This document shows, one piece after another, positions 17,742-43,446 of a stretch of DNA of 64,000 nucleotides. Position 1 is the first letter of the stretch. Each line of letters opens with the position of its first letter. The stretch covers positions 1 through 64,000 of the IMG/VR virus record IMGVR_UViG_3300023313_000001, one strand, 5' to 3'. The notes beneath the pieces were generated by a model. It was not told the DNA's origin. It worked only from the letters and a program-made list of their open reading frames with translations, and did not search any database. Made by a program: the position numbers and the translations under genes.

Positions 17742-18905
17742 ATGCAACCATTATATAGCCAACTACTCAAACTGACACAAGATTCAGAAGCATTTTATTT
17801 CACTGATCACGTATTAGACACCACCACTTATCGTATATTTTTATATCGGTTGGCATCCTATACAGATTTTTGTTTACCTGGTGCACTCGAATGTCGTGGG
17901 ACTATGTTCGAAATGGATGGTGAAGATCCAGTTCGTTTAGCTGCTCGTCCGATGCAGAAATTTTTTAATATCAACGAATGCCCGTTTACCATGGGGGTTA
18001 ATTATTCAGATGGAAATATCGAAAGTGTGATGTTAAAAGAGGATGGAAGTCTCATTAGTACATTTATCCACACTGATGGTGAACTATACTGTAAATCTAA
18101 AGGATCTCTAAGCTCCGACCAAGCACAATGGGCTAATGCGTGGATACGCAAGGAGTCTATGCGGTACGATCAACTTAAAACAGTTACCAATCTGGGTAAT
18201 ACTATAAACTTAGAATATTGTGCACCGTTTAATAGAATTGTGTTAAATTATAATTGTGAAAGTATGATCATTCTTAATGTGCGTCAAATAAGTAGTGGAC
18301 TATACTTACCCAAATCCACGTTTAAGGACACTTGTCCATACATCCCTACCATATGGGTTAACAATATAGAAGATACTGATATTGAGTATGACACGTTGGA
18401 ATCATTAATTGATGATACTCCCAATTTGGAAAACATTGAAGGGTTCGTCGTTCGTTTAAAAAATGGATTGCATTTTAAAGTCAAAACTAATTGGTACTTA
18501 GTTCAACATAGAGCTAAAGATAGTATTGATTCCCCTCGTAGGTTGTTTGAAGCTGCTATTACAGAAGCTACTGATGATTTACGATCGTTGTTTACTGACA
18601 ACCAATTTGTGTTAGATAAAATAACAGAGATGGAAGAGAAAGCTGCTGGAATCTATAATCATATTGTTGAGAGAGTTGAACGATTTGTTAAAACGCATCA
18701 TGATTTAATTGAAAATGATTGTCGTAAGGATTTTGCCATGTTAGGCCAACAGGCGTTTCTAGGAACAGATAAACGATTGTTTGGTTTAGTAATGATGTGT
18801 TATAAACGTGAACGTGGGGATGGTGATGGTCCAGATTATAAACAATTTTGTATCAAAAATTGGAGAGACTGGGGATTAAAAGATGGCCCTGAGGATGATG
18901 AATAA
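17742..18905 (+). CDS. rnlA: RNA ligase 1 (T4 RnlA-like)
   Basis: YRLASYTDF...ALECRG.MFE, PMQKFFN.NE, motif I KEDGSLI, EY.AP.NRIV, EGFV, FKVKT.WY. Confidence 0.92.
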   Translation: MQPLYSQLLKLTQDSEAFYFTDHVLDTTTYRIFLYRLASYTDFCLPGALECRGTMFEMDGEDPVRLAARPMQKFFNINECPFTMGVNYSDGNIESVMLKEDGSLISTFIHTDGELYCKSKGSLSSDQAQWANAWIRKESMRYDQLKTVTNLGNTINLEYCAPFNRIVLNYNCESMIILNVRQISSGLYLPKSTFKDTCPYIPTIWVNNIEDTDIEYDTLESLIDDTPNLENIEGFVVRLKNGLHFKVKTNWYLVQHRAKDSIDSPRRLFEAAITEATDDLRSLFTDNQFVLDKITEMEEKAAGIYNHIVERVERFVKTHHDLIENDCRKDFAMLGQQAFLGTDKRLFGLVMMCYKRERGDGDGPDYKQFCIKNWRDWGLKDGPEDDE

Positions 18906-36532: not shown

Positions 36533-36609
36533 GGGCGTGTAGTGTAGTCTGGTAGCACACCATCCTTTTAAGATGATCAGGGTAGGTTCGAATCCTATCA
36601 CGCCCACCA
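36533..36609 (+). tRNA. tRNA-Lys(TTT)
   Basis: GGGCGTG/CACGCCC; CATC-CTTTTAA-GATG; ACCA. Confidence 0.9.
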
Positions 36610-38263: not shown

Positions 38264-38779
38264 ATGTCGCACAATTGCAAATACACTTCGACCAAAACTT
38301 ATCACCAAGCGTTCCCTGTGGCATACCGTCAATGGCGTGCAGATCGAAAGAGTGGTAAAACATCTGGCATGTATACTCAAACTGAAATTCCTGGATGTAA
38401 CGCTATCCATGGATATGCTCTATCAATGCATTTTGAATTTTCCACAGATGTTCTAGATGCTAGAAATTGGGTTATGGATTTTGGTGGTTTAAGAGAACTG
38501 AAAAATATGTTAGATGAATACTTTGACCATACATTATTATTAGCTCAAGATGATCCAGATTATGATCAGATCAAAGCGTTAGGAACTGCTGGGCTTGCTA
38601 AGATAACGGAAGTTGAACGAACTGGATGTGAAGGAATAGCTGACTGGTTATATGAATACATCAATACCATATTTTTACCAAATTATGGTGAGGCTGATCG
38701 TATATGGTGTACTAAAATAGAAGTAAGGGAAACTGATAAAAACATGGCGTTCAGAAGTGGTTATCGAGATATTGAATAA
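38264..38779 (+). CDS. queD: 6-pyruvoyl-tetrahydropterin/6-carboxytetrahydropterin synthase
   Basis: AYRQWRA...C..IHGY, LD.RNWVMDFGGL, FDHTLL, GCE, EVRET.KN.A. Confidence 0.85.
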   Translation: MSHNCKYTSTKTYHQAFPVAYRQWRADRKSGKTSGMYTQTEIPGCNAIHGYALSMHFEFSTDVLDARNWVMDFGGLRELKNMLDEYFDHTLLLAQDDPDYDQIKALGTAGLAKITEVERTGCEGIADWLYEYINTIFLPNYGEADRIWCTKIEVRETDKNMAFRSGYRDIE

Positions 38780-38811
38780 CACATAACTTAAATAATATAG
38801 GAATACTAACA

Positions 38812-39039
38812 ATGAATTATGCACAACTAGCAGAACAAGCGTACGTATCGTACGGAGAATATTCAAATTGGAAAAACTACCAAGGTAGTGGAATGCCAGC
38901 ATGGAAAGATTTACCACAATCAAATCAAAATGCGTGGATGAATGCAGCAGAATCTACGGTGGCACTAGTGCTAGACGATGTAGAGGGAGCAGTAGAGATG
39001 TCCAAGACTGAAATTTGTCCAAGGTTTGTTGCAGGGTAG
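38812..39039 (+). CDS. hypothetical protein
   Basis: AY..Y...NYQG..MP.W.DLP....AW. Confidence 0.65.
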   Translation: MNYAQLAEQAYVSYGEYSNWKNYQGSGMPAWKDLPQSNQNAWMNAAESTVALVLDDVEGAVEMSKTEICPRFVAG

Positions 39040-39171
39040 AATATATACCTAAGCACTGGATGATTCGACTGAGTGCACTTTGAGTTTCAAGTCGACGCAA
39101 GTTGGGAGGTCTTGTTCCTTTATCTTCCAAACTTTTTCATTACAATACATAAAACACAAGGAAAATTAATA

Positions 39172-39864
39172 ATGTCGTATAATAAATTAAAGTGTGACAG
39201 TGCACTAGGTGCACTAGTCCAAAAACATCTCGAATCTCTACAATTACATACTCCAATGGTAGAATCTCCTTTATCAGAACAACAAAAAATTGATGCTATC
39301 AAACCCTTAATGCATGATATAATGGCAGTATTAGGATTAGATCTGACTGACGATAGTTTAGCAGACACTCCCCACAGAGTGGCTAAAATGTTTGTGAGAG
39401 AAATTTTTTGGGGATTAGATCCAGCTGCGTTTCCCAAATGTACAACAGTCAATAATAAAATGACTAGGGGGAATGAGTTCGTGTTAGAAAAAAACGTAAG
39501 CGTTAACTCTACATGCGAACACCATTTTCTACCCATATTAGGTGGATGTTGTATAGCGTATGTTCCACAAGATAAAGTTTTAGGATTGAGTAAGTTAAAT
39601 CGAGTCGCTGAATATTTCTCCAAGCGACCTCAGGTACAGGAAAGATTGACATCTCAAATTAGAGAGGCACTGGCCTTTATCTTAGGCACAGACGATGTTA
39701 TTGTTTACATCGATGCCAAACATACATGTGTGTCTACTAGGGGGGTGGAAGATGTTGGGTCGTCTACCGTAACGATGTCAGCTGGCGGTATATTTAATAC
39801 CCCAGAGTCTAGCATTCGATCTGAATTTTTAGCAATAGCTAGATCTGGAATGAATTTAGTGTAA
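39172..39864 (+). CDS. folE: GTP cyclohydrolase I
   Basis: LDL.DDSL.DTP.RVAKM, STCEHHF, GLSKLNR, RPQVQERLT, HTCV..RGV. Confidence 0.95.
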   Translation: MSYNKLKCDSALGALVQKHLESLQLHTPMVESPLSEQQKIDAIKPLMHDIMAVLGLDLTDDSLADTPHRVAKMFVREIFWGLDPAAFPKCTTVNNKMTRGNEFVLEKNVSVNSTCEHHFLPILGGCCIAYVPQDKVLGLSKLNRVAEYFSKRPQVQERLTSQIREALAFILGTDDVIVYIDAKHTCVSTRGVEDVGSSTVTMSAGGIFNTPESSIRSEFLAIARSGMNLV

Positions 39865-39981: not shown

Positions 39982-40344
39982 ATGACTGACATATCTCACA
40001 CAGTAGATCTGAGTACCTTAATATTATCTGATAAACCTCACCCTGAACCAGATTGGGAAAATCCGCGCGTGACAATCTCCATTGGGTTGAATGCACGAAT
40101 GCAAATCATTGAAATCATTAATGACGCAACAGCTAATCCGTACATAGTTGAAATGTTCGATGAGGGTGGTATTGAAGACGAGTTAGAATTTGATGACGAA
40201 GTTGGCATTTATCGTGCTGAACTTAGTACATTAGATACCTCATATGAAATGGAGTATGGCAGAGAATATGATTGGGATCCTGTGGTTAAACTGACACACA
40301 AGTACAACTTTATAACTTGCGGATGGGATGAAACAGATGACTAA
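39982..40344 (+). CDS. hypothetical acidic protein
   Basis: ORF track. Confidence 0.65.
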   Translation: MTDISHTVDLSTLILSDKPHPEPDWENPRVTISIGLNARMQIIEIINDATANPYIVEMFDEGGIEDELEFDDEVGIYRAELSTLDTSYEMEYGREYDWDPVVKLTHKYNFITCGWDETDD

Positions 40345-40612
40345 TAAAAAGAAAACAATTATCCATGTTAATCAATTTAAAATAAAAGCCAACAATAAAA
40401 CTATCCGTGAAAATCCTGATGATTGGATAGATAAACTAGAACCACCACTCACTGTTAAAACGTATAATACCAACGATTATTGTGATCGTGCTGATATTAC
40501 TGTTGGTGGGAAAGTGGTGGCTTCAATAATTCATCGTCCACATAAACCACTAAGTTGTGGGGCTAGAGTGTGGATAGAAACTTATGAGGATGTTGAATTA
40601 AAGTTCAACTAA
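40328..40612 (+). CDS. conserved phage hypothetical protein
   Basis: IIHVNQ..I.AN...P.LTVK...P.KPLSCGARVWIET. Confidence 0.75.
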   Translation: MKQMTNKKKTIIHVNQFKIKANNKTIRENPDDWIDKLEPPLTVKTYNTNDYCDRADITVGGKVVASIIHRPHKPLSCGARVWIETYEDVELKFN

Positions 40613-40618
40613 AGTAAT

Positions 40619-41137
40619 ATGTTATCAATTTACACCCCCGAAGTAAAATTAACCCCATCTATTAACATGTTTGTAGCTGGCAGTATTGAAATGGGAACTG
40701 CTGAAAATTGGCAAGACCTTCTGTTACAAAAGCTATCACTATTTAATGATGATGAATCATTTAACCTCAATGTGTTTAACCCTCGTCGAGCTGATTGGGA
40801 TACATCTATTGATCCTACATCCAACGATCCCGAGTTAATGTATCAAATTAATTGGGAGTTAGATGCATTAGATACAGCAGATATTATTGTATTGTTCTTA
40901 GATCCGAACACTAAATCTCCAATATCGTTATTAGAATTAGGATTATACTCTGGTAAGCGACTGATAGTGTATTGCCCACCAGAATTTTATCGAAGTGCTA
41001 ATGTACGAGTTACCTGTGCACGACACGACATTGAATTGCACACCGATCGTAAGGAATGGATTGATTCTATATTGGGTACTATATTGATATTACTTGAACG
41101 AAAGATAACCCCTACAACAGTCCTGGATTTCCAATAG
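40619..41137 (+). CDS. nucleoside 2-deoxyribosyltransferase-like protein
   Basis: F.AGSIEMG.A.NWQ, FNPRR.DWD, QINWEL.AL..AD, SPISLLELGL. Confidence 0.85.
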   Translation: MLSIYTPEVKLTPSINMFVAGSIEMGTAENWQDLLLQKLSLFNDDESFNLNVFNPRRADWDTSIDPTSNDPELMYQINWELDALDTADIIVLFLDPNTKSPISLLELGLYSGKRLIVYCPPEFYRSANVRVTCARHDIELHTDRKEWIDSILGTILILLERKITPTTVLDFQ

Positions 41138-41230
41138 GTAATAAGCGTTAGATATAGTTATGTGGTTGATATCAACATGGAGTTACCGTAACCCTGTTGT
41201 ATTAATGTCAAATGTATGTACAATTGCTTC

Positions 41231-41327
41231 ACTGATTTGTTGCGAAGCGTAGAGTTACTTCAAAAATACTCGACCTTAACCGTCGAGCTTAATGCTTACA
41301 CTTTTCGTGTTTTTATCTCAAACCAGT
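41231..41327 (+). ncRNA. Y RNA 1 (Ro60-associated, no tRNA-like domain)
   Basis: Shared TGCGAAG..AGAGTTACTTC / TCG..TTTTATCTCA motifs, terminal stem, upstream of Ro60. Confidence 0.7.
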
Positions 41328-41351
41328 ACTAAACGGGCTATATAGTAGCAC

Positions 41352-41443
41352 GTTTTTAAGAATATTGCTGCGAAGCATTGGGTTACTTCACTTTTAATGA
41401 AACTAACACCCTATCGCGATTTTATCTCAGTATTCTTAAAAAC
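41352..41443 (+). ncRNA. Y RNA 2 (Ro60-associated)
   Basis: Same motifs; long terminal stem TTTTAAGAATATTG/CAGTATTCTTAAAA. Confidence 0.7.
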
Positions 41444-41578
41444 ATGTTGCTGCGAAGATTAGAGTTACTTCTATGGTAAAGACGAGATGTTGGTTCGAGT
41501 CCAACTCAATCCGTAAGGATTGATAGCTTAACGGATAAAGCACGAAAATCTCTCTCATCGATTTTATCTCAACATGTT
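41441..41578 (+). ncRNA. Y RNA 3, YrlA-type with permuted tRNA-like domain
   Basis: T arm GTTGG-TTCGAGT-CCAAC, closed acceptor hairpin, then D arm TAGCTT..GG..AAGC. Confidence 0.8.
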
Positions 41579-41660
41579 ATTATTAATATTATCAACTTCG
41601 TTAACTATTTTGAAATGATAACGGAAAATACATTTCCATAACCTCACAAAATATTTAACG

Positions 41661-41800
41661 AAGTTGATGTTGCGAAGATTAGAGTTACTTCTCCCTGGAT
41701 GTCGTCGGTTCGATTCCGACTTTAGGATCTGATTCCTTTATAGCTCAGTTGGTAGAGCGCCTGGCTCAACAGTCTCTTATCGTTTTTACCTCATCAACTT
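41661..41800 (+). ncRNA. Y RNA 4, YrlA-type with permuted tRNA-like domain
   Basis: T arm GTCGG-TTCGATT-CCGAC, then TAGCTCAGTTGGTAGAGC D arm. Confidence 0.8.
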
Positions 41801-41840
41801 GTTTTATTTAAGCTGCTCAATCTCTTAATAGGAAACTACA

Positions 41841-43388
41841 ATGACTAAAATGAACCCAAAAAATACAAACACTAACCGTTACAAAGGCGTGAGCTTTAAC
41901 AGGAATGTTCAAGAACTGAAAGGTGCTGAACAAGCTCTGTATGAAATCATTGTAACTACTTTATTCGGTAAGGATAAATTTTACGAATCAAATGATGAAA
42001 CACTAGTGCGTTTAAAAGATGCTGTGAATAAGGTCGTTGCTAAAGGTAACGTGGATTTCATTGCAAACTCAATCGTGCACGCTCGTTCAGTAATGAACAT
42101 TCGTTCTATGCCAGTAATATTAACTGTGTTGTTGGCAGAGTCTCTCCGTGCACACAATACTACATATGAAAACATGCGTCGATTGACTACGGATGTTATT
42201 CAACGTGCTGATCAAATCAATGATTTATTTGCGTATGCAGTAAACGTATTTGGATCGGGTAAAAAAGTTCCTATGGCAATCAAACGTGGTTTAGCTGATG
42301 CATTCAACAATTTCGGGGCATACGCTTTTGCGAAATACAATCGCACTAATGGAACGGTAAAGTTCACCGACGTATTGCGTGTTGTTCATCCAAAAGCTAA
42401 GGATGTGGCACAGGCTGAAATTTTCGATAAACTAATGAATGGATCACGTATTGAGCAAACAGAAGCTGGTACACTTTCAACTCCGTACACCTGGGAAACT
42501 GAATTATCAGAAGCAGGTAAAACTGGAAAGTCAAAAGCTAAAGTTTGGACAGAACTAATCAAGTCTGATAAATTAGGTTATATGGCACTGTTACGTAACT
42601 TACGTAATATGATTCAGGAAGGCGTAAGTACTAGTGTGATGAATTCCGTGTATGAGCGACTAGCTGATCCAGAACAAGTTGTTAAGTCTAAGCAACTACC
42701 ATTTCGTTTCGTGAATGCGTATGATGCTGTGGTAGGTGCTCCTGCGAAGATGAAACGTGCTATCTCTCGTGCTATGGATGCTAGTTTATCAAACATACCT
42801 TCACTTGGGGATAACCTTTGGATAGTTGTGGATGTTTCGGCTTCAATGGATGGTACGTGGAGTCTAAGAACTTCCGATGGAGCAGCACCAATTAACACTG
42901 CAACATTATTTGCTGCAGCATTAGCGAAAGCCAATGCTGAGGCTGATAATGTAAAAATAACGTTATTTAGTGATGGTGCTAAGCATGCTTCTATCAATAC
43001 TGACGATAGTGTTATGTCTATTGCTTACAAACTACGTAAAGAGGTTTACGGTGGTGGAACTAACCTGGAGGCAGCACTAAGTGAGATTAAAACTCTCGGA
43101 TTTAAACCAGACACCGTGGTATTGTTTAGCGATATGCAGGTTAACCGGTTACGTGGTGGCAAATCAGTATCTAGTTACTTTGATGACAACACTATTAAGG
43201 TGGCTATAGATCTTACCGGATATGCTTCAACCCCAGTAGGTCCAATGGATGGCTGGCATCAATTGTCAGGATGGAGTGAACGTTTGTTTGATTTCATTCC
43301 AGCCATTAAAAACAAGTCTTCAGTGACGAAACAACTTTCAGTTCCTTATCTCGGGGTAGCTGGAATTAAGAAGCTCCACCGTCAGTAA
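41841..43388 (+). CDS. Ro60/TROVE-vWA RNA-binding protein (Rsr)
   Basis: D.FYES, YAFAKY.R, DVLRVVHPK, PYTWETELS, LGYMALLRNLRN, SKQLPFRF..AY, vWA DVSASM, GGTN, SDMQ. Confidence 0.92.
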   Translation: MTKMNPKNTNTNRYKGVSFNRNVQELKGAEQALYEIIVTTLFGKDKFYESNDETLVRLKDAVNKVVAKGNVDFIANSIVHARSVMNIRSMPVILTVLLAESLRAHNTTYENMRRLTTDVIQRADQINDLFAYAVNVFGSGKKVPMAIKRGLADAFNNFGAYAFAKYNRTNGTVKFTDVLRVVHPKAKDVAQAEIFDKLMNGSRIEQTEAGTLSTPYTWETELSEAGKTGKSKAKVWTELIKSDKLGYMALLRNLRNMIQEGVSTSVMNSVYERLADPEQVVKSKQLPFRFVNAYDAVVGAPAKMKRAISRAMDASLSNIPSLGDNLWIVVDVSASMDGTWSLRTSDGAAPINTATLFAAALAKANAEADNVKITLFSDGAKHASINTDDSVMSIAYKLRKEVYGGGTNLEAALSEIKTLGFKPDTVVLFSDMQVNRLRGGKSVSSYFDDNTIKVAIDLTGYASTPVGPMDGWHQLSGWSERLFDFIPAIKNKSSVTKQLSVPYLGVAGIKKLHRQ

Positions 43389-43409
43389 CTAAATTATCAC
43401 TGATCGCCA

Positions 43410-43446
43410 AATGGGTTAAGGAAGTACTTCCTTAACCCATTTTTTT
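43410..43446 (+). terminator. Rho-independent terminator
   Basis: ATGGGTTAAGGAAG-TAC-TTCCTTAACCCAT plus U tract. Confidence 0.85.

What the first reader, a model, noticed from the sequence alone, without database searches (positions are those of the whole stretch)
41269..41482. Y RNAs display 7-nt anticodon-like loops, including an exact tRNA-Lys(UUU) loop
Seen: right after the conserved GTTACTTC, Y2 forms TTCA-CTTTTAA-TGAA, the same loop as tRNA-Lys(TTT) at 36533. Y1 has CTCGAC-CTTAACC-GTCGAG (U33, UAA) and Y3 has TCT-ATGGTAA-AGA (U33, GGU). Established: tRNA-Lys(UUU) is the target of the PrrC anticodon nuclease. Inference: Ro60-protected Y RNAs act as anticodon decoys or sensors for host tRNases, with Rnl1 available for repair.
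Basis: inference. Interest (0 to 1): 0.62.

Follow-up and report, generated by a model that had tools for sequence, protein, structure and literature searches.

The report
Anticodon-arm-like hairpins in phage Y RNAs
Four small Y RNA genes sit in front of a phage Ro60 gene, and three carry a hairpin shaped like a tRNA anticodon arm; this hairpin recurs in about half of some 140 related Y RNAs, but nothing ties it specifically to the lysine-tRNA nuclease PrrC.

Summary
Four tandem Y RNAs (41231-41800, + strand) precede a Ro60 (TROVE+vWA) gene in a 229.5-kb virus record from a microbial mat. The three 7-nt-loop hairpins are where stated, and the Y2 loop equals the loop of the phage tRNA-Lys(UUU).

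Taken alone they are weak evidence. Only the Y1 hairpin is stable by itself, and Y1 has C, not a purine, at position 37.

Relatives change the picture. In 143 related Y RNAs from viral, metagenomic and bacterial contigs, a hairpin starting in the conserved UUAC-UUC box has anticodon-arm geometry far more often than in shuffled controls:
- 34 of 66 T-arm Y RNAs, against 8.9 +/- 2.6 in shuffles
- 33 of 77 short Y RNAs, against 9.2 +/- 2.5 in shuffles
- U33 in about 75%, R37 in 70-82%
- a 3-6-nt (mostly 4-5-nt) spacer before the T arm

This is the published, little-described "V stem-loop", probably the anticodon arm of a tRNA ancestor.

The central triplet varies. The commonest loop is Asn-type (CUGUUAA). 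The Lys-type loop occurs only here and differs from it by one base. A PrrC-specific decoy is therefore unsupported. A general anticodon-loop-mimic role stays open and can be tested.

The parts
41231..41327 (+). Y1, a short (YrlB-like) Y RNA. Basal stem 41231-41239 with 41319-41327; Ro60-type box GCGAAG..GAGTTACTTC 41242-41261.
   Evidence: Covariance model R1 scores it 44.7 bits, E 5.5e-10, and it was not in the seed. Sequence.
41269..41287 (+). Y1 hairpin: 6 bp with 7-nt loop CUUAACC, offset 7 nt from the box; C at positions 37 and 38.
   Evidence: dG -6.6 kcal/mol alone. Present in both the MFE and the centroid fold.
41352..41443 (+). Y2, a short Y RNA with a 16-bp basal stem (41352-41367 with 41428-41443). 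Its 3' end overlaps the start of Y3 by 3 nt.
   Evidence: Fold z-score -4.26. R1 scores 67.5 bits, as a seed member.
41387..41401 (+). Y2 apical hairpin UUCA-CUUUUAA-UGAA, resembling an anticodon arm. Its loop is identical to that of the phage tRNA-Lys(UUU).
   Evidence: dG +1.0 alone, but it forms in the whole-RNA MFE. Same frame as L138, L147 and L143.
41441..41578 (+). Y3, a YrlA-like Y RNA with a tRNA-like module: T arm 41489-41505, closed acceptor-like hairpin, D arm.
   Evidence: Rfam YrlA 32.9 bits, E 4e-5, below the gathering score of 69. Fold z-score -2.76.
41468..41484 (+). Y3 V arm in anticodon-arm geometry: CUUCU / AUGGUAA / AGACG (4 of 5 pairs), then spacer AGAU and the T arm.
   Evidence: The same U.C mismatch register occurs in L009, L148, L132 and L095.
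41661..41800 (+). Y4, a YrlA-like Y RNA (T arm 41704-41720, canonical D arm). It has no anticodon-like arm, only a possible 3-bp stem with a 5-nt loop.
   Evidence: Rfam YrlA partial match, 27.5 bits..
41590..41669 (+). Long, stable hairpin between Y3 and Y4. Its 3' arm is the 5' strand of Y4's basal stem.
   Evidence: dG -26.7 kcal/mol, z-score -6.8.
41841..43388 (+). Ro60/Rsr ortholog (TROVE plus vWA domains).
   Evidence: Pfam TROVE E 4.9e-29 and VWA_2 E 1.4e-8. At most 31% identity to Ro60 of named phages.
43409..43442 (+). Intrinsic terminator after Ro60, the likely end of a Y1-Y4-Ro60 transcription unit.
   Evidence: 15-bp stem followed by a T run.
36533..36609 (+). Phage tRNA-Lys(UUU), anticodon loop CUUUUAA.
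17742..18905 (+). T4-type RNA ligase 1.
   Evidence: Pfam RNA_lig_T4_1 E 3e-24 and T4_Rnl1_C E 1.9e-15.

Best explanation
The three hairpins are this phage's copies of the optional "V arm" of bacterial and phage Y RNAs.

Anatomy (shown):
- Each Y RNA has a basal stem, an internal loop with the Ro60-type CGAAG box, and a second helix ending in GGG-UUAC.
- From the UUC that follows UUAC, a hairpin begins.
- In about half of the relatives this hairpin has the anatomy of a tRNA anticodon arm: a 5-bp stem, a 7-nt loop with U33, A37 and A38, and, where a T arm follows, a spacer of 3-6 nt (mostly 4-5 nt).
- In short Y RNAs such as Y1 and Y2 it is the apical hairpin. In YrlA-like RNAs such as Y3 it precedes the T arm, acceptor-like hairpin and D arm.

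Origin (inferred): it is the anticodon arm of the 5' tRNA of the tRNA-derived ancestor. Selection keeps its shape but not its triplet.

Function (inferred): on the Ro60 particle it acts as a protein-binding or tethering arm that presents an anticodon-like loop. The partner is unknown.

The Lys-type loop (shown): the Y2 loop is a one-base variant of the family's commonest Asn-type loop, so it is not evidence for a PrrC decoy.

State of the window's copies (shown): Y2 and Y3 have weak stems, Y1 has an offset arm with a non-canonical loop, and Y4 has lost the arm.
For: Identity as Y RNAs:
- Four copies of the box lie in front of a TROVE+vWA gene on the same strand.
- Rfam YrlA gives sub-threshold hits on Y3 and Y4.
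- The CM built from 19 relatives finds Y1 at E 5.5e-10.
- Both helices show covariation.
- 40 fetched loci carrying the box gave a tblastn match to this Ro60, 36 of them strong. Bacterial examples (Lentzea, a Frankiaceae MAG and two others) match too.

Hairpin, T-arm class (n = 66):
- Stem of at least 4 bp and spacer of 3-6 nt: 25 sequences with a 7-nt loop, against 3-7 for loop lengths 3-6, 8, 10 and 11, and 17 for length 9.
- Fixed tRNA geometry is met in 34, against 8.9 +/- 2.6 in 500 shuffles, maximum 17.
- U33 76% against 23% in shuffles; R37 82% against 54%; A38 74% against 27%.
- Stem pairs change on both sides at 4 of 5 positions.

Hairpin, short class (n = 77): 33 sequences, against 9.2 +/- 2.5 in shuffles; U33 75% against 21%.

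tRNA likeness:
- ARAGORN calls six Y RNAs from other contigs as tRNAs, with the Ro60 box in the D-arm place and this hairpin as the anticodon arm.
- 10 of 30 loops equal real tRNA loops, against 0 of 30 reversed loops.

Literature: the V stem-loop, the conserved YUAY and the dimeric-tRNA origin model are published (PMC4201824, bioRxiv 10.1101/312249).
Against: - The arm is missing in about half of the relatives and in Y4, so Y RNA function does not need it.
- The Y2 and Y3 hairpins are not stable by nearest-neighbour energies, and Y3's AGA competes with the 3' strand.
- The sequences share descent, so the shuffle statistics overstate independence. Alignment A5 was also selected for pairing.
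- There is no expression, Ro60-binding or partner data.
- The 5'-pyrimidine and 3'-adenine skew of the region explains part of the U33/A37 signal.
- Two reviews by the Wolin laboratory could not be read, so the anticodon-arm reading may already be in print.
Confidence: 0.65

Rival explanations
1. The loops are decoys or sensors for host anticodon nucleases. Y2 mimics tRNA-Lys(UUU) against PrrC, Ro60 protects the RNA, and Rnl1 repairs cut tRNAs.
For: - The Y2 loop is identical to the tRNA-Lys loop.
- The phage carries 19 tRNAs, Rnl1 with its tRNA-specific C domain, and an HD-kinase.
- The family-wide anticodon-arm geometry is what a mimic would need.
- A competitive-inhibitor role for YrlA was proposed for Salmonella (PMC7790460).
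Against: - The Lys-type loop is unique to this phage among 74 loops listed. The commonest loop is Asn-type and the triplets are varied.
- The Y2 stem is 4 A-U-rich pairs and unlike the tRNA-Lys stem.
- Y1 has C37.
- From my own knowledge, PrrC recognition depends on modified U34 and A37.
- The host and its nucleases are unknown.
Confidence: 0.1
2. A decaying relic. The arm is only a leftover of the tRNA ancestor, or of recombination with neighbouring tRNA genes. In this phage it has no function of its own beyond spacing.
For: - The stems of Y2 and Y3 are weak, Y1's loop is non-canonical, and Y4 has lost the arm.
- About half of the relatives lack it.
- Y RNA arrays sit beside tRNA clusters.
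Against: - Compensatory stem changes, strict 7-nt loop length and conserved U33/A37/A38 persist across very divergent Y RNAs with different stems.
- The stems do not match tRNAs on the same contig where the loops do, as in L068, L015 and the window. This argues against recent copying.
Confidence: 0.2
3. Chance. Short A/U-rich hairpins with 7-nt loops arise at random in an AT-rich spacer, and one of them happens to equal a tRNA loop.
For: - Y2 and Y3 are not stable alone.
- A single 7-mer match carries a background of a few percent.
Against: The same hairpin, in the same register after UUAC-UUC, recurs at 3-4 times the shuffle rate in two independent classes.
Confidence: 0.03
4. The Y1 hairpin is an intrinsic terminator read on the minus strand.
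For: The pattern scan lists 41288-41268 (- strand) followed by a T-rich tail.
Against: - No minus-strand gene runs into it. The flanking genes are on the + strand.
- The hairpin lies inside a Y RNA recognised by the model.
Confidence: 0.02

Closest known systems
YrlA (Rfam RF02553), the tRNA-like Y RNAs of Salmonella, Mycobacterium and mycobacteriophages (Chen et al. 2014, PMC4201824; Wang et al. 2018, bioRxiv 10.1101/312249)
   Same: - Encoded upstream of Ro60 on the same strand.
- CGAA-G box near the 5' end and a long terminal stem.
- Conserved YUAY, T arm, closed acceptor-like hairpin and D arm (Y3, Y4).
- An optional "V" stem-loop before the T arm.
   Different: - Scores of 32.9 and 27.5 bits fall below Rfam's 69.
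- The box reads UGCGAAG rather than GNCGAAG.
- The published description calls V a poorly conserved variable arm and states that YrlA lacks an anticodon loop. Here V has anticodon-arm geometry in about half of the clade.
[quoted passage not shown] 2014)
   Same: Y1 and Y2 consist of the Ro60-binding stem plus one apical hairpin, and the apical region is pyrimidine-rich on its 5' side.
   Different: The apical loop is often a 7-nt loop of the form CU-NNN-AA closed by 4-5 bp, that is, shaped like an anticodon arm. The papers I could read do not note this.
D. radiodurans Yrn1
   Same: It has been drawn with a potential anticodon arm with a 5-bp stem (PMC4201824).
   Different: Its loop has 6 nt, and the orientation of its T and D arms differs. 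The authors judged it to have evolved independently.
T4 PrrC / Pnk / Rnl1 tRNA-Lys restriction and repair
   Same: The phage has Rnl1, an HD-kinase and its own tRNA-Lys(UUU).
   Different: No PrrC, host or cleavage data exist. The Y RNA link to this pathway is inference only.
Thermus phage phiLo Ro60 with Yrl1 and Yrl2 (PMC12135203)
   Same: A phage Ro60 with two or more Y-like RNAs upstream and a CGAA motif. That work proposes hijack of host PNPase.
   Different: No tRNA-like or anticodon-like element is reported there. The sequences are unrelated.

Membership tests
Bacterial/phage Y RNA (YrlA/YrlB) | Encoded within about 4 kb of a Ro60/Rsr gene on the same strand | tested here: met
   Y1-Y4 lie at 41231-41800 and Ro60 at 41841-43388, all on the + strand.
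Bacterial/phage Y RNA (YrlA/YrlB) | GNCGAAN0-1G motif near the 5' end | tested here: inconclusive
   The core CGAAG is present in all four, but the first G is replaced by U, giving UGCGAAG. The same variant occurs in relatives next to Ro60.
Bacterial/phage Y RNA (YrlA/YrlB) | 5' and 3' ends pair into a long stem bearing the Ro60 site | tested here: met
   Whole-RNA folds. In the 19-sequence alignment, 12 of 16 consensus pairs change on both sides.
YrlA (RF02553) | tRNA-like module (T arm, closed acceptor-like stem, D arm) reaching Rfam's gathering score | tested here: inconclusive
   The elements are visible in Y3 and Y4, but the scores of 32.9 and 27.5 bits are below 69. Y1 and Y2 have no such module.
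Bacterial/phage Y RNA (YrlA/YrlB) | Bound and stabilised by Ro60 | not testable with these tools
   No RNA run holds the locus.
tRNA anticodon-arm mimic | 5-bp stem, 7-nt loop, U33, purine 37 | tested here: inconclusive
   - Y2: 4 bp, 7 nt, U33, A37.
- Y3: 4 of 5 pairs, 7 nt, U33, A37, 4-nt spacer to the T arm.
- Y1: 6 bp, 7 nt, U33, but C37.
- Y4: none.
Sources. At family level the feature is met in 34 of 66 and 33 of 77 sequences.
PrrC-directed tRNA-Lys decoy | Lys(UUU)-type loop conserved among related Y RNAs | tested here: not met
   CUUUUAA occurs only in the window's Y2 among the 74 loops listed. The commonest loop is CUGUUAA.
PrrC-directed tRNA-Lys decoy | Recognition or inhibition of the nuclease; modified U34 and A37 | not testable with these tools
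   This needs biochemistry, and the host is unknown.

The most novel reading that the evidence does not exclude
Phage and bacterial Ro60 particles carry interchangeable mimics of the anticodon stem-loop. The V arm, with a conserved C/A32-U33...A37-A38 frame and a variable triplet, binds enzymes that read anticodon loops, such as anticodon nucleases, tRNA-guanine transglycosylase or t6A enzymes. It either tethers them to Ro60 or sequesters them. Arrays of 4-7 Y RNAs per genome would then form a panel of different targets. This would give a structural basis to the competitive-inhibitor idea raised for Salmonella YrlA.
Probability: 0.12. Interest if true: 0.85.

Novelty: new variant of a known kind. 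Interest (0 to 1): 0.58.

Why it matters
The effector partners of bacterial and phage Y RNAs are largely unknown. YrlA has been described as a tRNA mimic without an anticodon loop.

A conserved hairpin shaped like an anticodon arm, in phage, metagenomic and actinobacterial Y RNAs, has three consequences:
- It supports a tRNA origin for the 5' half of these RNAs.
- It defines a short element that can be mutated.
- It makes testable the idea that Ro60 particles engage anticodon-loop-reading proteins, including phage-defence nucleases.

For this phage, it places the Y RNAs alongside 19 tRNAs, a tmRNA, Rnl1 and an HD-kinase as part of a large tRNA-centred gene set.

Tried and rejected
- Megablast of 40000-43000 against named phages gave no match.
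- Peptide-pattern search for Ro60 relatives in viral contigs gave none. No close relative of this phage was found anywhere; the best Ro60 identity is 33%. Conservation of the Y2 loop in near kin could therefore not be tested.
- My stem-closure heuristics for picking Y RNAs were noisy. I replaced them with a covariance model.
- Single-linkage clustering at 70% identity collapsed nearly all short Y RNAs into one cluster, so it gave no control for relatedness.
- RNAalifold on the short class gives no consensus apical hairpin, because the apical region aligns poorly. Register-anchored counting was needed.
- The test for a match between a Y loop and a tRNA on the same contig gave 3 of 28. Two of those were ARAGORN calls on the Y RNA itself.
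- The genome-collection scan was mostly chance hits. Only a few bacterial loci were used.
- No RNA run holds the locus.
- Two reviews (PMC10870794, PMC6047535) are not held.
- The RtcB search gave only a weak sub-threshold match. PNK3P gave none.

Full report
WHAT IS THERE

The window is the first 64 kb of a 229.5-kb IMG/VR virus record, estimated about 65% complete. It comes from a microbial mat metagenome.

Between a nucleoside deoxyribosyltransferase-like gene (40619-41137) and a 515-aa TROVE+vWA protein, that is Ro60/Rsr (41841-43388), lie four + strand units. They share a 5' box (UGCGAAG, 4 nt, then GRG-UUACUUC) and a 3' box ending in UUUAYCUC.

The unit bounds, taken from folds and from the model, are:
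- Y1: 41231-41327
- Y2: 41352-41443
- Y3: 41441-41578
- Y4: 41661-41800

Y3 and Y4 carry a T arm, a closed acceptor-like hairpin and a D arm. They hit Rfam YrlA at 32.9 and 27.5 bits, below the gathering score of 69. Y1 and Y2 are short.

A strong terminator follows Ro60 at 43409-43442, and none lies between the RNAs and Ro60. One transcription unit with processing is therefore likely, as reported for M. smegmatis (PMC4201824).

THE OBSERVATION

All three hairpins are at the stated coordinates, and the Y2 loop equals the anticodon loop of the phage tRNA-Lys(UUU). There are four caveats:
- Y1's hairpin starts 7 nt after the box and has C at position 37.
- Y2's 5' stem strand is part of the box.
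- Only Y1's hairpin is stable alone: -6.6 kcal/mol, against +1.0 for Y2 and +1.5 for Y3.
- In the fold of whole Y3, the AGA pairs with the 3' strand.

None of the 19 tRNAs, all of which lie in the window, has the Y1 or Y3 loop.

RELATIVES

The box pattern found Y RNAs in viral contigs, metagenome contigs and bacterial genomes.

A covariance model built from 19 short relatives recovered 88 hits in the first search and 42 in the second; I analysed the best 58 and all 42. These include Y1 at E 5.5e-10, and arrays of 4-7 Y RNAs per contig.

Forty fetched loci carrying the box gave a tblastn match to this phage's Ro60, 36 of them strong. So did the bacterial examples: Lentzea, a Frankiaceae MAG and two others.

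The consensus has a basal stem and a second helix. Both show compensatory changes, and the second helix ends in GGG:CCC and a U:A pair at the start of UUAC. UUAC is the published conserved YUAY, and the stem-loop after it is the published "V" stem-loop (PMC4201824).

THE KEY RESULT

T-arm class, 66 unique Y RNAs:
- A hairpin with at least 4 bp, ending 3-6 nt before the T stem, has a 7-nt loop in 25 sequences. Loop lengths 3-6, 8, 10 and 11 give 3-7 each. Length 9 gives 17, and these are mostly the same hairpins with one pair fewer.
- With fixed tRNA geometry, 34 of 66 pass, against 8.9 +/- 2.6 in 500 shuffles that keep UACUUC; the maximum was 17.
- The loops have U33 in 76%, R37 in 82% and A38 in 74%. 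Hairpins from the shuffles have 23%, 54% and 27%.
- The stems differ between contigs by changes on both sides at 4 of 5 positions. That alignment was chosen for pairing, so only the diversity of pair types counts as evidence.

Short class, 77 unique Y RNAs:
- A hairpin with at least 4 bp and a 7-nt loop occurs in 33, against 9.2 +/- 2.5 in shuffles. U33 is 75% against 21%.
- Taking the best-energy hairpin of each short Y RNA, 23 have 7-nt loops; 7 of these read CU-NNN-AA, against 2.2% of background windows.

Independent signs of tRNA likeness:
- ARAGORN, at default settings, calls six Y RNAs of other contigs as tRNAs. It places the Ro60 box as the D arm and this hairpin as the anticodon arm.
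- Ten of 30 loops equal real tRNA loops seen in the same data, against none of 30 reversed loops.

WHERE THE WINDOW'S COPIES FIT

- Y2 shares its frame, UUCA-loop-UGAA, with L138 (Asn-type loop) and L147 (Ser-type).
- Y3 shares the CUUCN/NGACG stem, with a U.C mismatch and a 4-5-nt spacer, with L009, L148, L132 and L095.
- Y1 is an offset arm with a non-canonical loop.
- Y4 has none.

The triplets vary widely. The commonest loop is CUGUUAA, found in at least seven contigs. The Lys-type loop occurs only in this window and differs from the commonest loop by one base. Because the frame is CU...AA, most single changes in the triplet give another authentic-looking tRNA loop. Where loops match a tRNA on the same contig (L068, L015 and the window), the stems do not match.

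INTERPRETATION

Shown:
- These are Y RNAs.
- The hairpin is a selected, optional module with anticodon-arm anatomy.

Inferred:
- It descends from the anticodon arm of the first tRNA in the dimeric-tRNA origin model (bioRxiv 10.1101/312249).
- It serves as a protein-binding arm of the Ro60 particle.

Its PrrC/Lys specificity is not supported. A related competitive-inhibitor idea exists for Salmonella YrlA (PMC7790460).

Context that makes a tRNA-directed role plausible:
- 19 tRNAs and a permuted tmRNA
- Rnl1 with its C-terminal domain
- an HD plus P-loop kinase protein

LIMITS

- The sequences are related by descent.
- The pyrimidine-to-adenine skew of the region contributes to the loop signal.
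- There are no expression or binding data.
- Two reviews could not be read.

Noticed in passing
window 41590-41669 (+): An 80-nt hairpin between Y3 and Y4 is very stable (dG -26.7 kcal/mol, z-score -6.8). Its 3' arm is the 5' strand of Y4's basal stem, so the two pairings exclude each other. It may be a processing site or a switch.
   Followed up: partly
window 640-717 (+): A tRNA with anticodon CUA (an amber suppressor, labelled Pyl by ARAGORN). This raises the question whether TAG is read through in part of this phage.
   Followed up: no
window 50655-51024 (+): A permuted (two-piece) tmRNA, 114.6 bits, with tag peptide ANDNFFATAIAA, next to a tRNA-Cys.
   Followed up: no
window 17742-18905 and G000 184225-185337: Rnl1 with the T4 Rnl1 C-terminal domain, and a 370-aa protein with an HD domain followed by a P-loop kinase (HD-Pnk-like). 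Together they would form an RNA end-healing and sealing set.
   Followed up: partly
window 38264-39864 (+): A QueD-like 6-pyruvoyl-tetrahydropterin synthase and GTP cyclohydrolase I lie just upstream of the Y RNA cluster (7-deazaguanine pathway). Many relatives' V-arm loops carry U33-G34-U35, which I recall to be the tRNA-guanine transglycosylase recognition motif; the window's own loops do not carry it.
   Followed up: no
loci L040:459-530, L021:2260-2330, L018:11417-11487, L157:89-162, L015:8914-8984, L028:936-1010: ARAGORN annotates the 5' halves of these Y RNAs as tRNA genes. Such calls in phage genomes may be mis-annotated Y RNAs.
   Followed up: yes
loci L090:924-1586, L040:457-878, L024:1-400, L009:12197-12736, L021: Tandem arrays of 4-7 Y RNAs per contig, often beside tRNA clusters. 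A true tRNA-Asn(GUU) is frequently the neighbour.
   Followed up: partly
G000 150772-151125: A weak match to the N-terminal part of RtcB (17.8 bits, below cut-off) inside a 993-aa open frame.
   Followed up: no
window 41428-41449: The 3' strand of Y2's basal stem and the 5' strand of Y3's overlap by 3 nt (41441-41443). The two RNAs cannot both keep full stems after a single cut.
   Followed up: no
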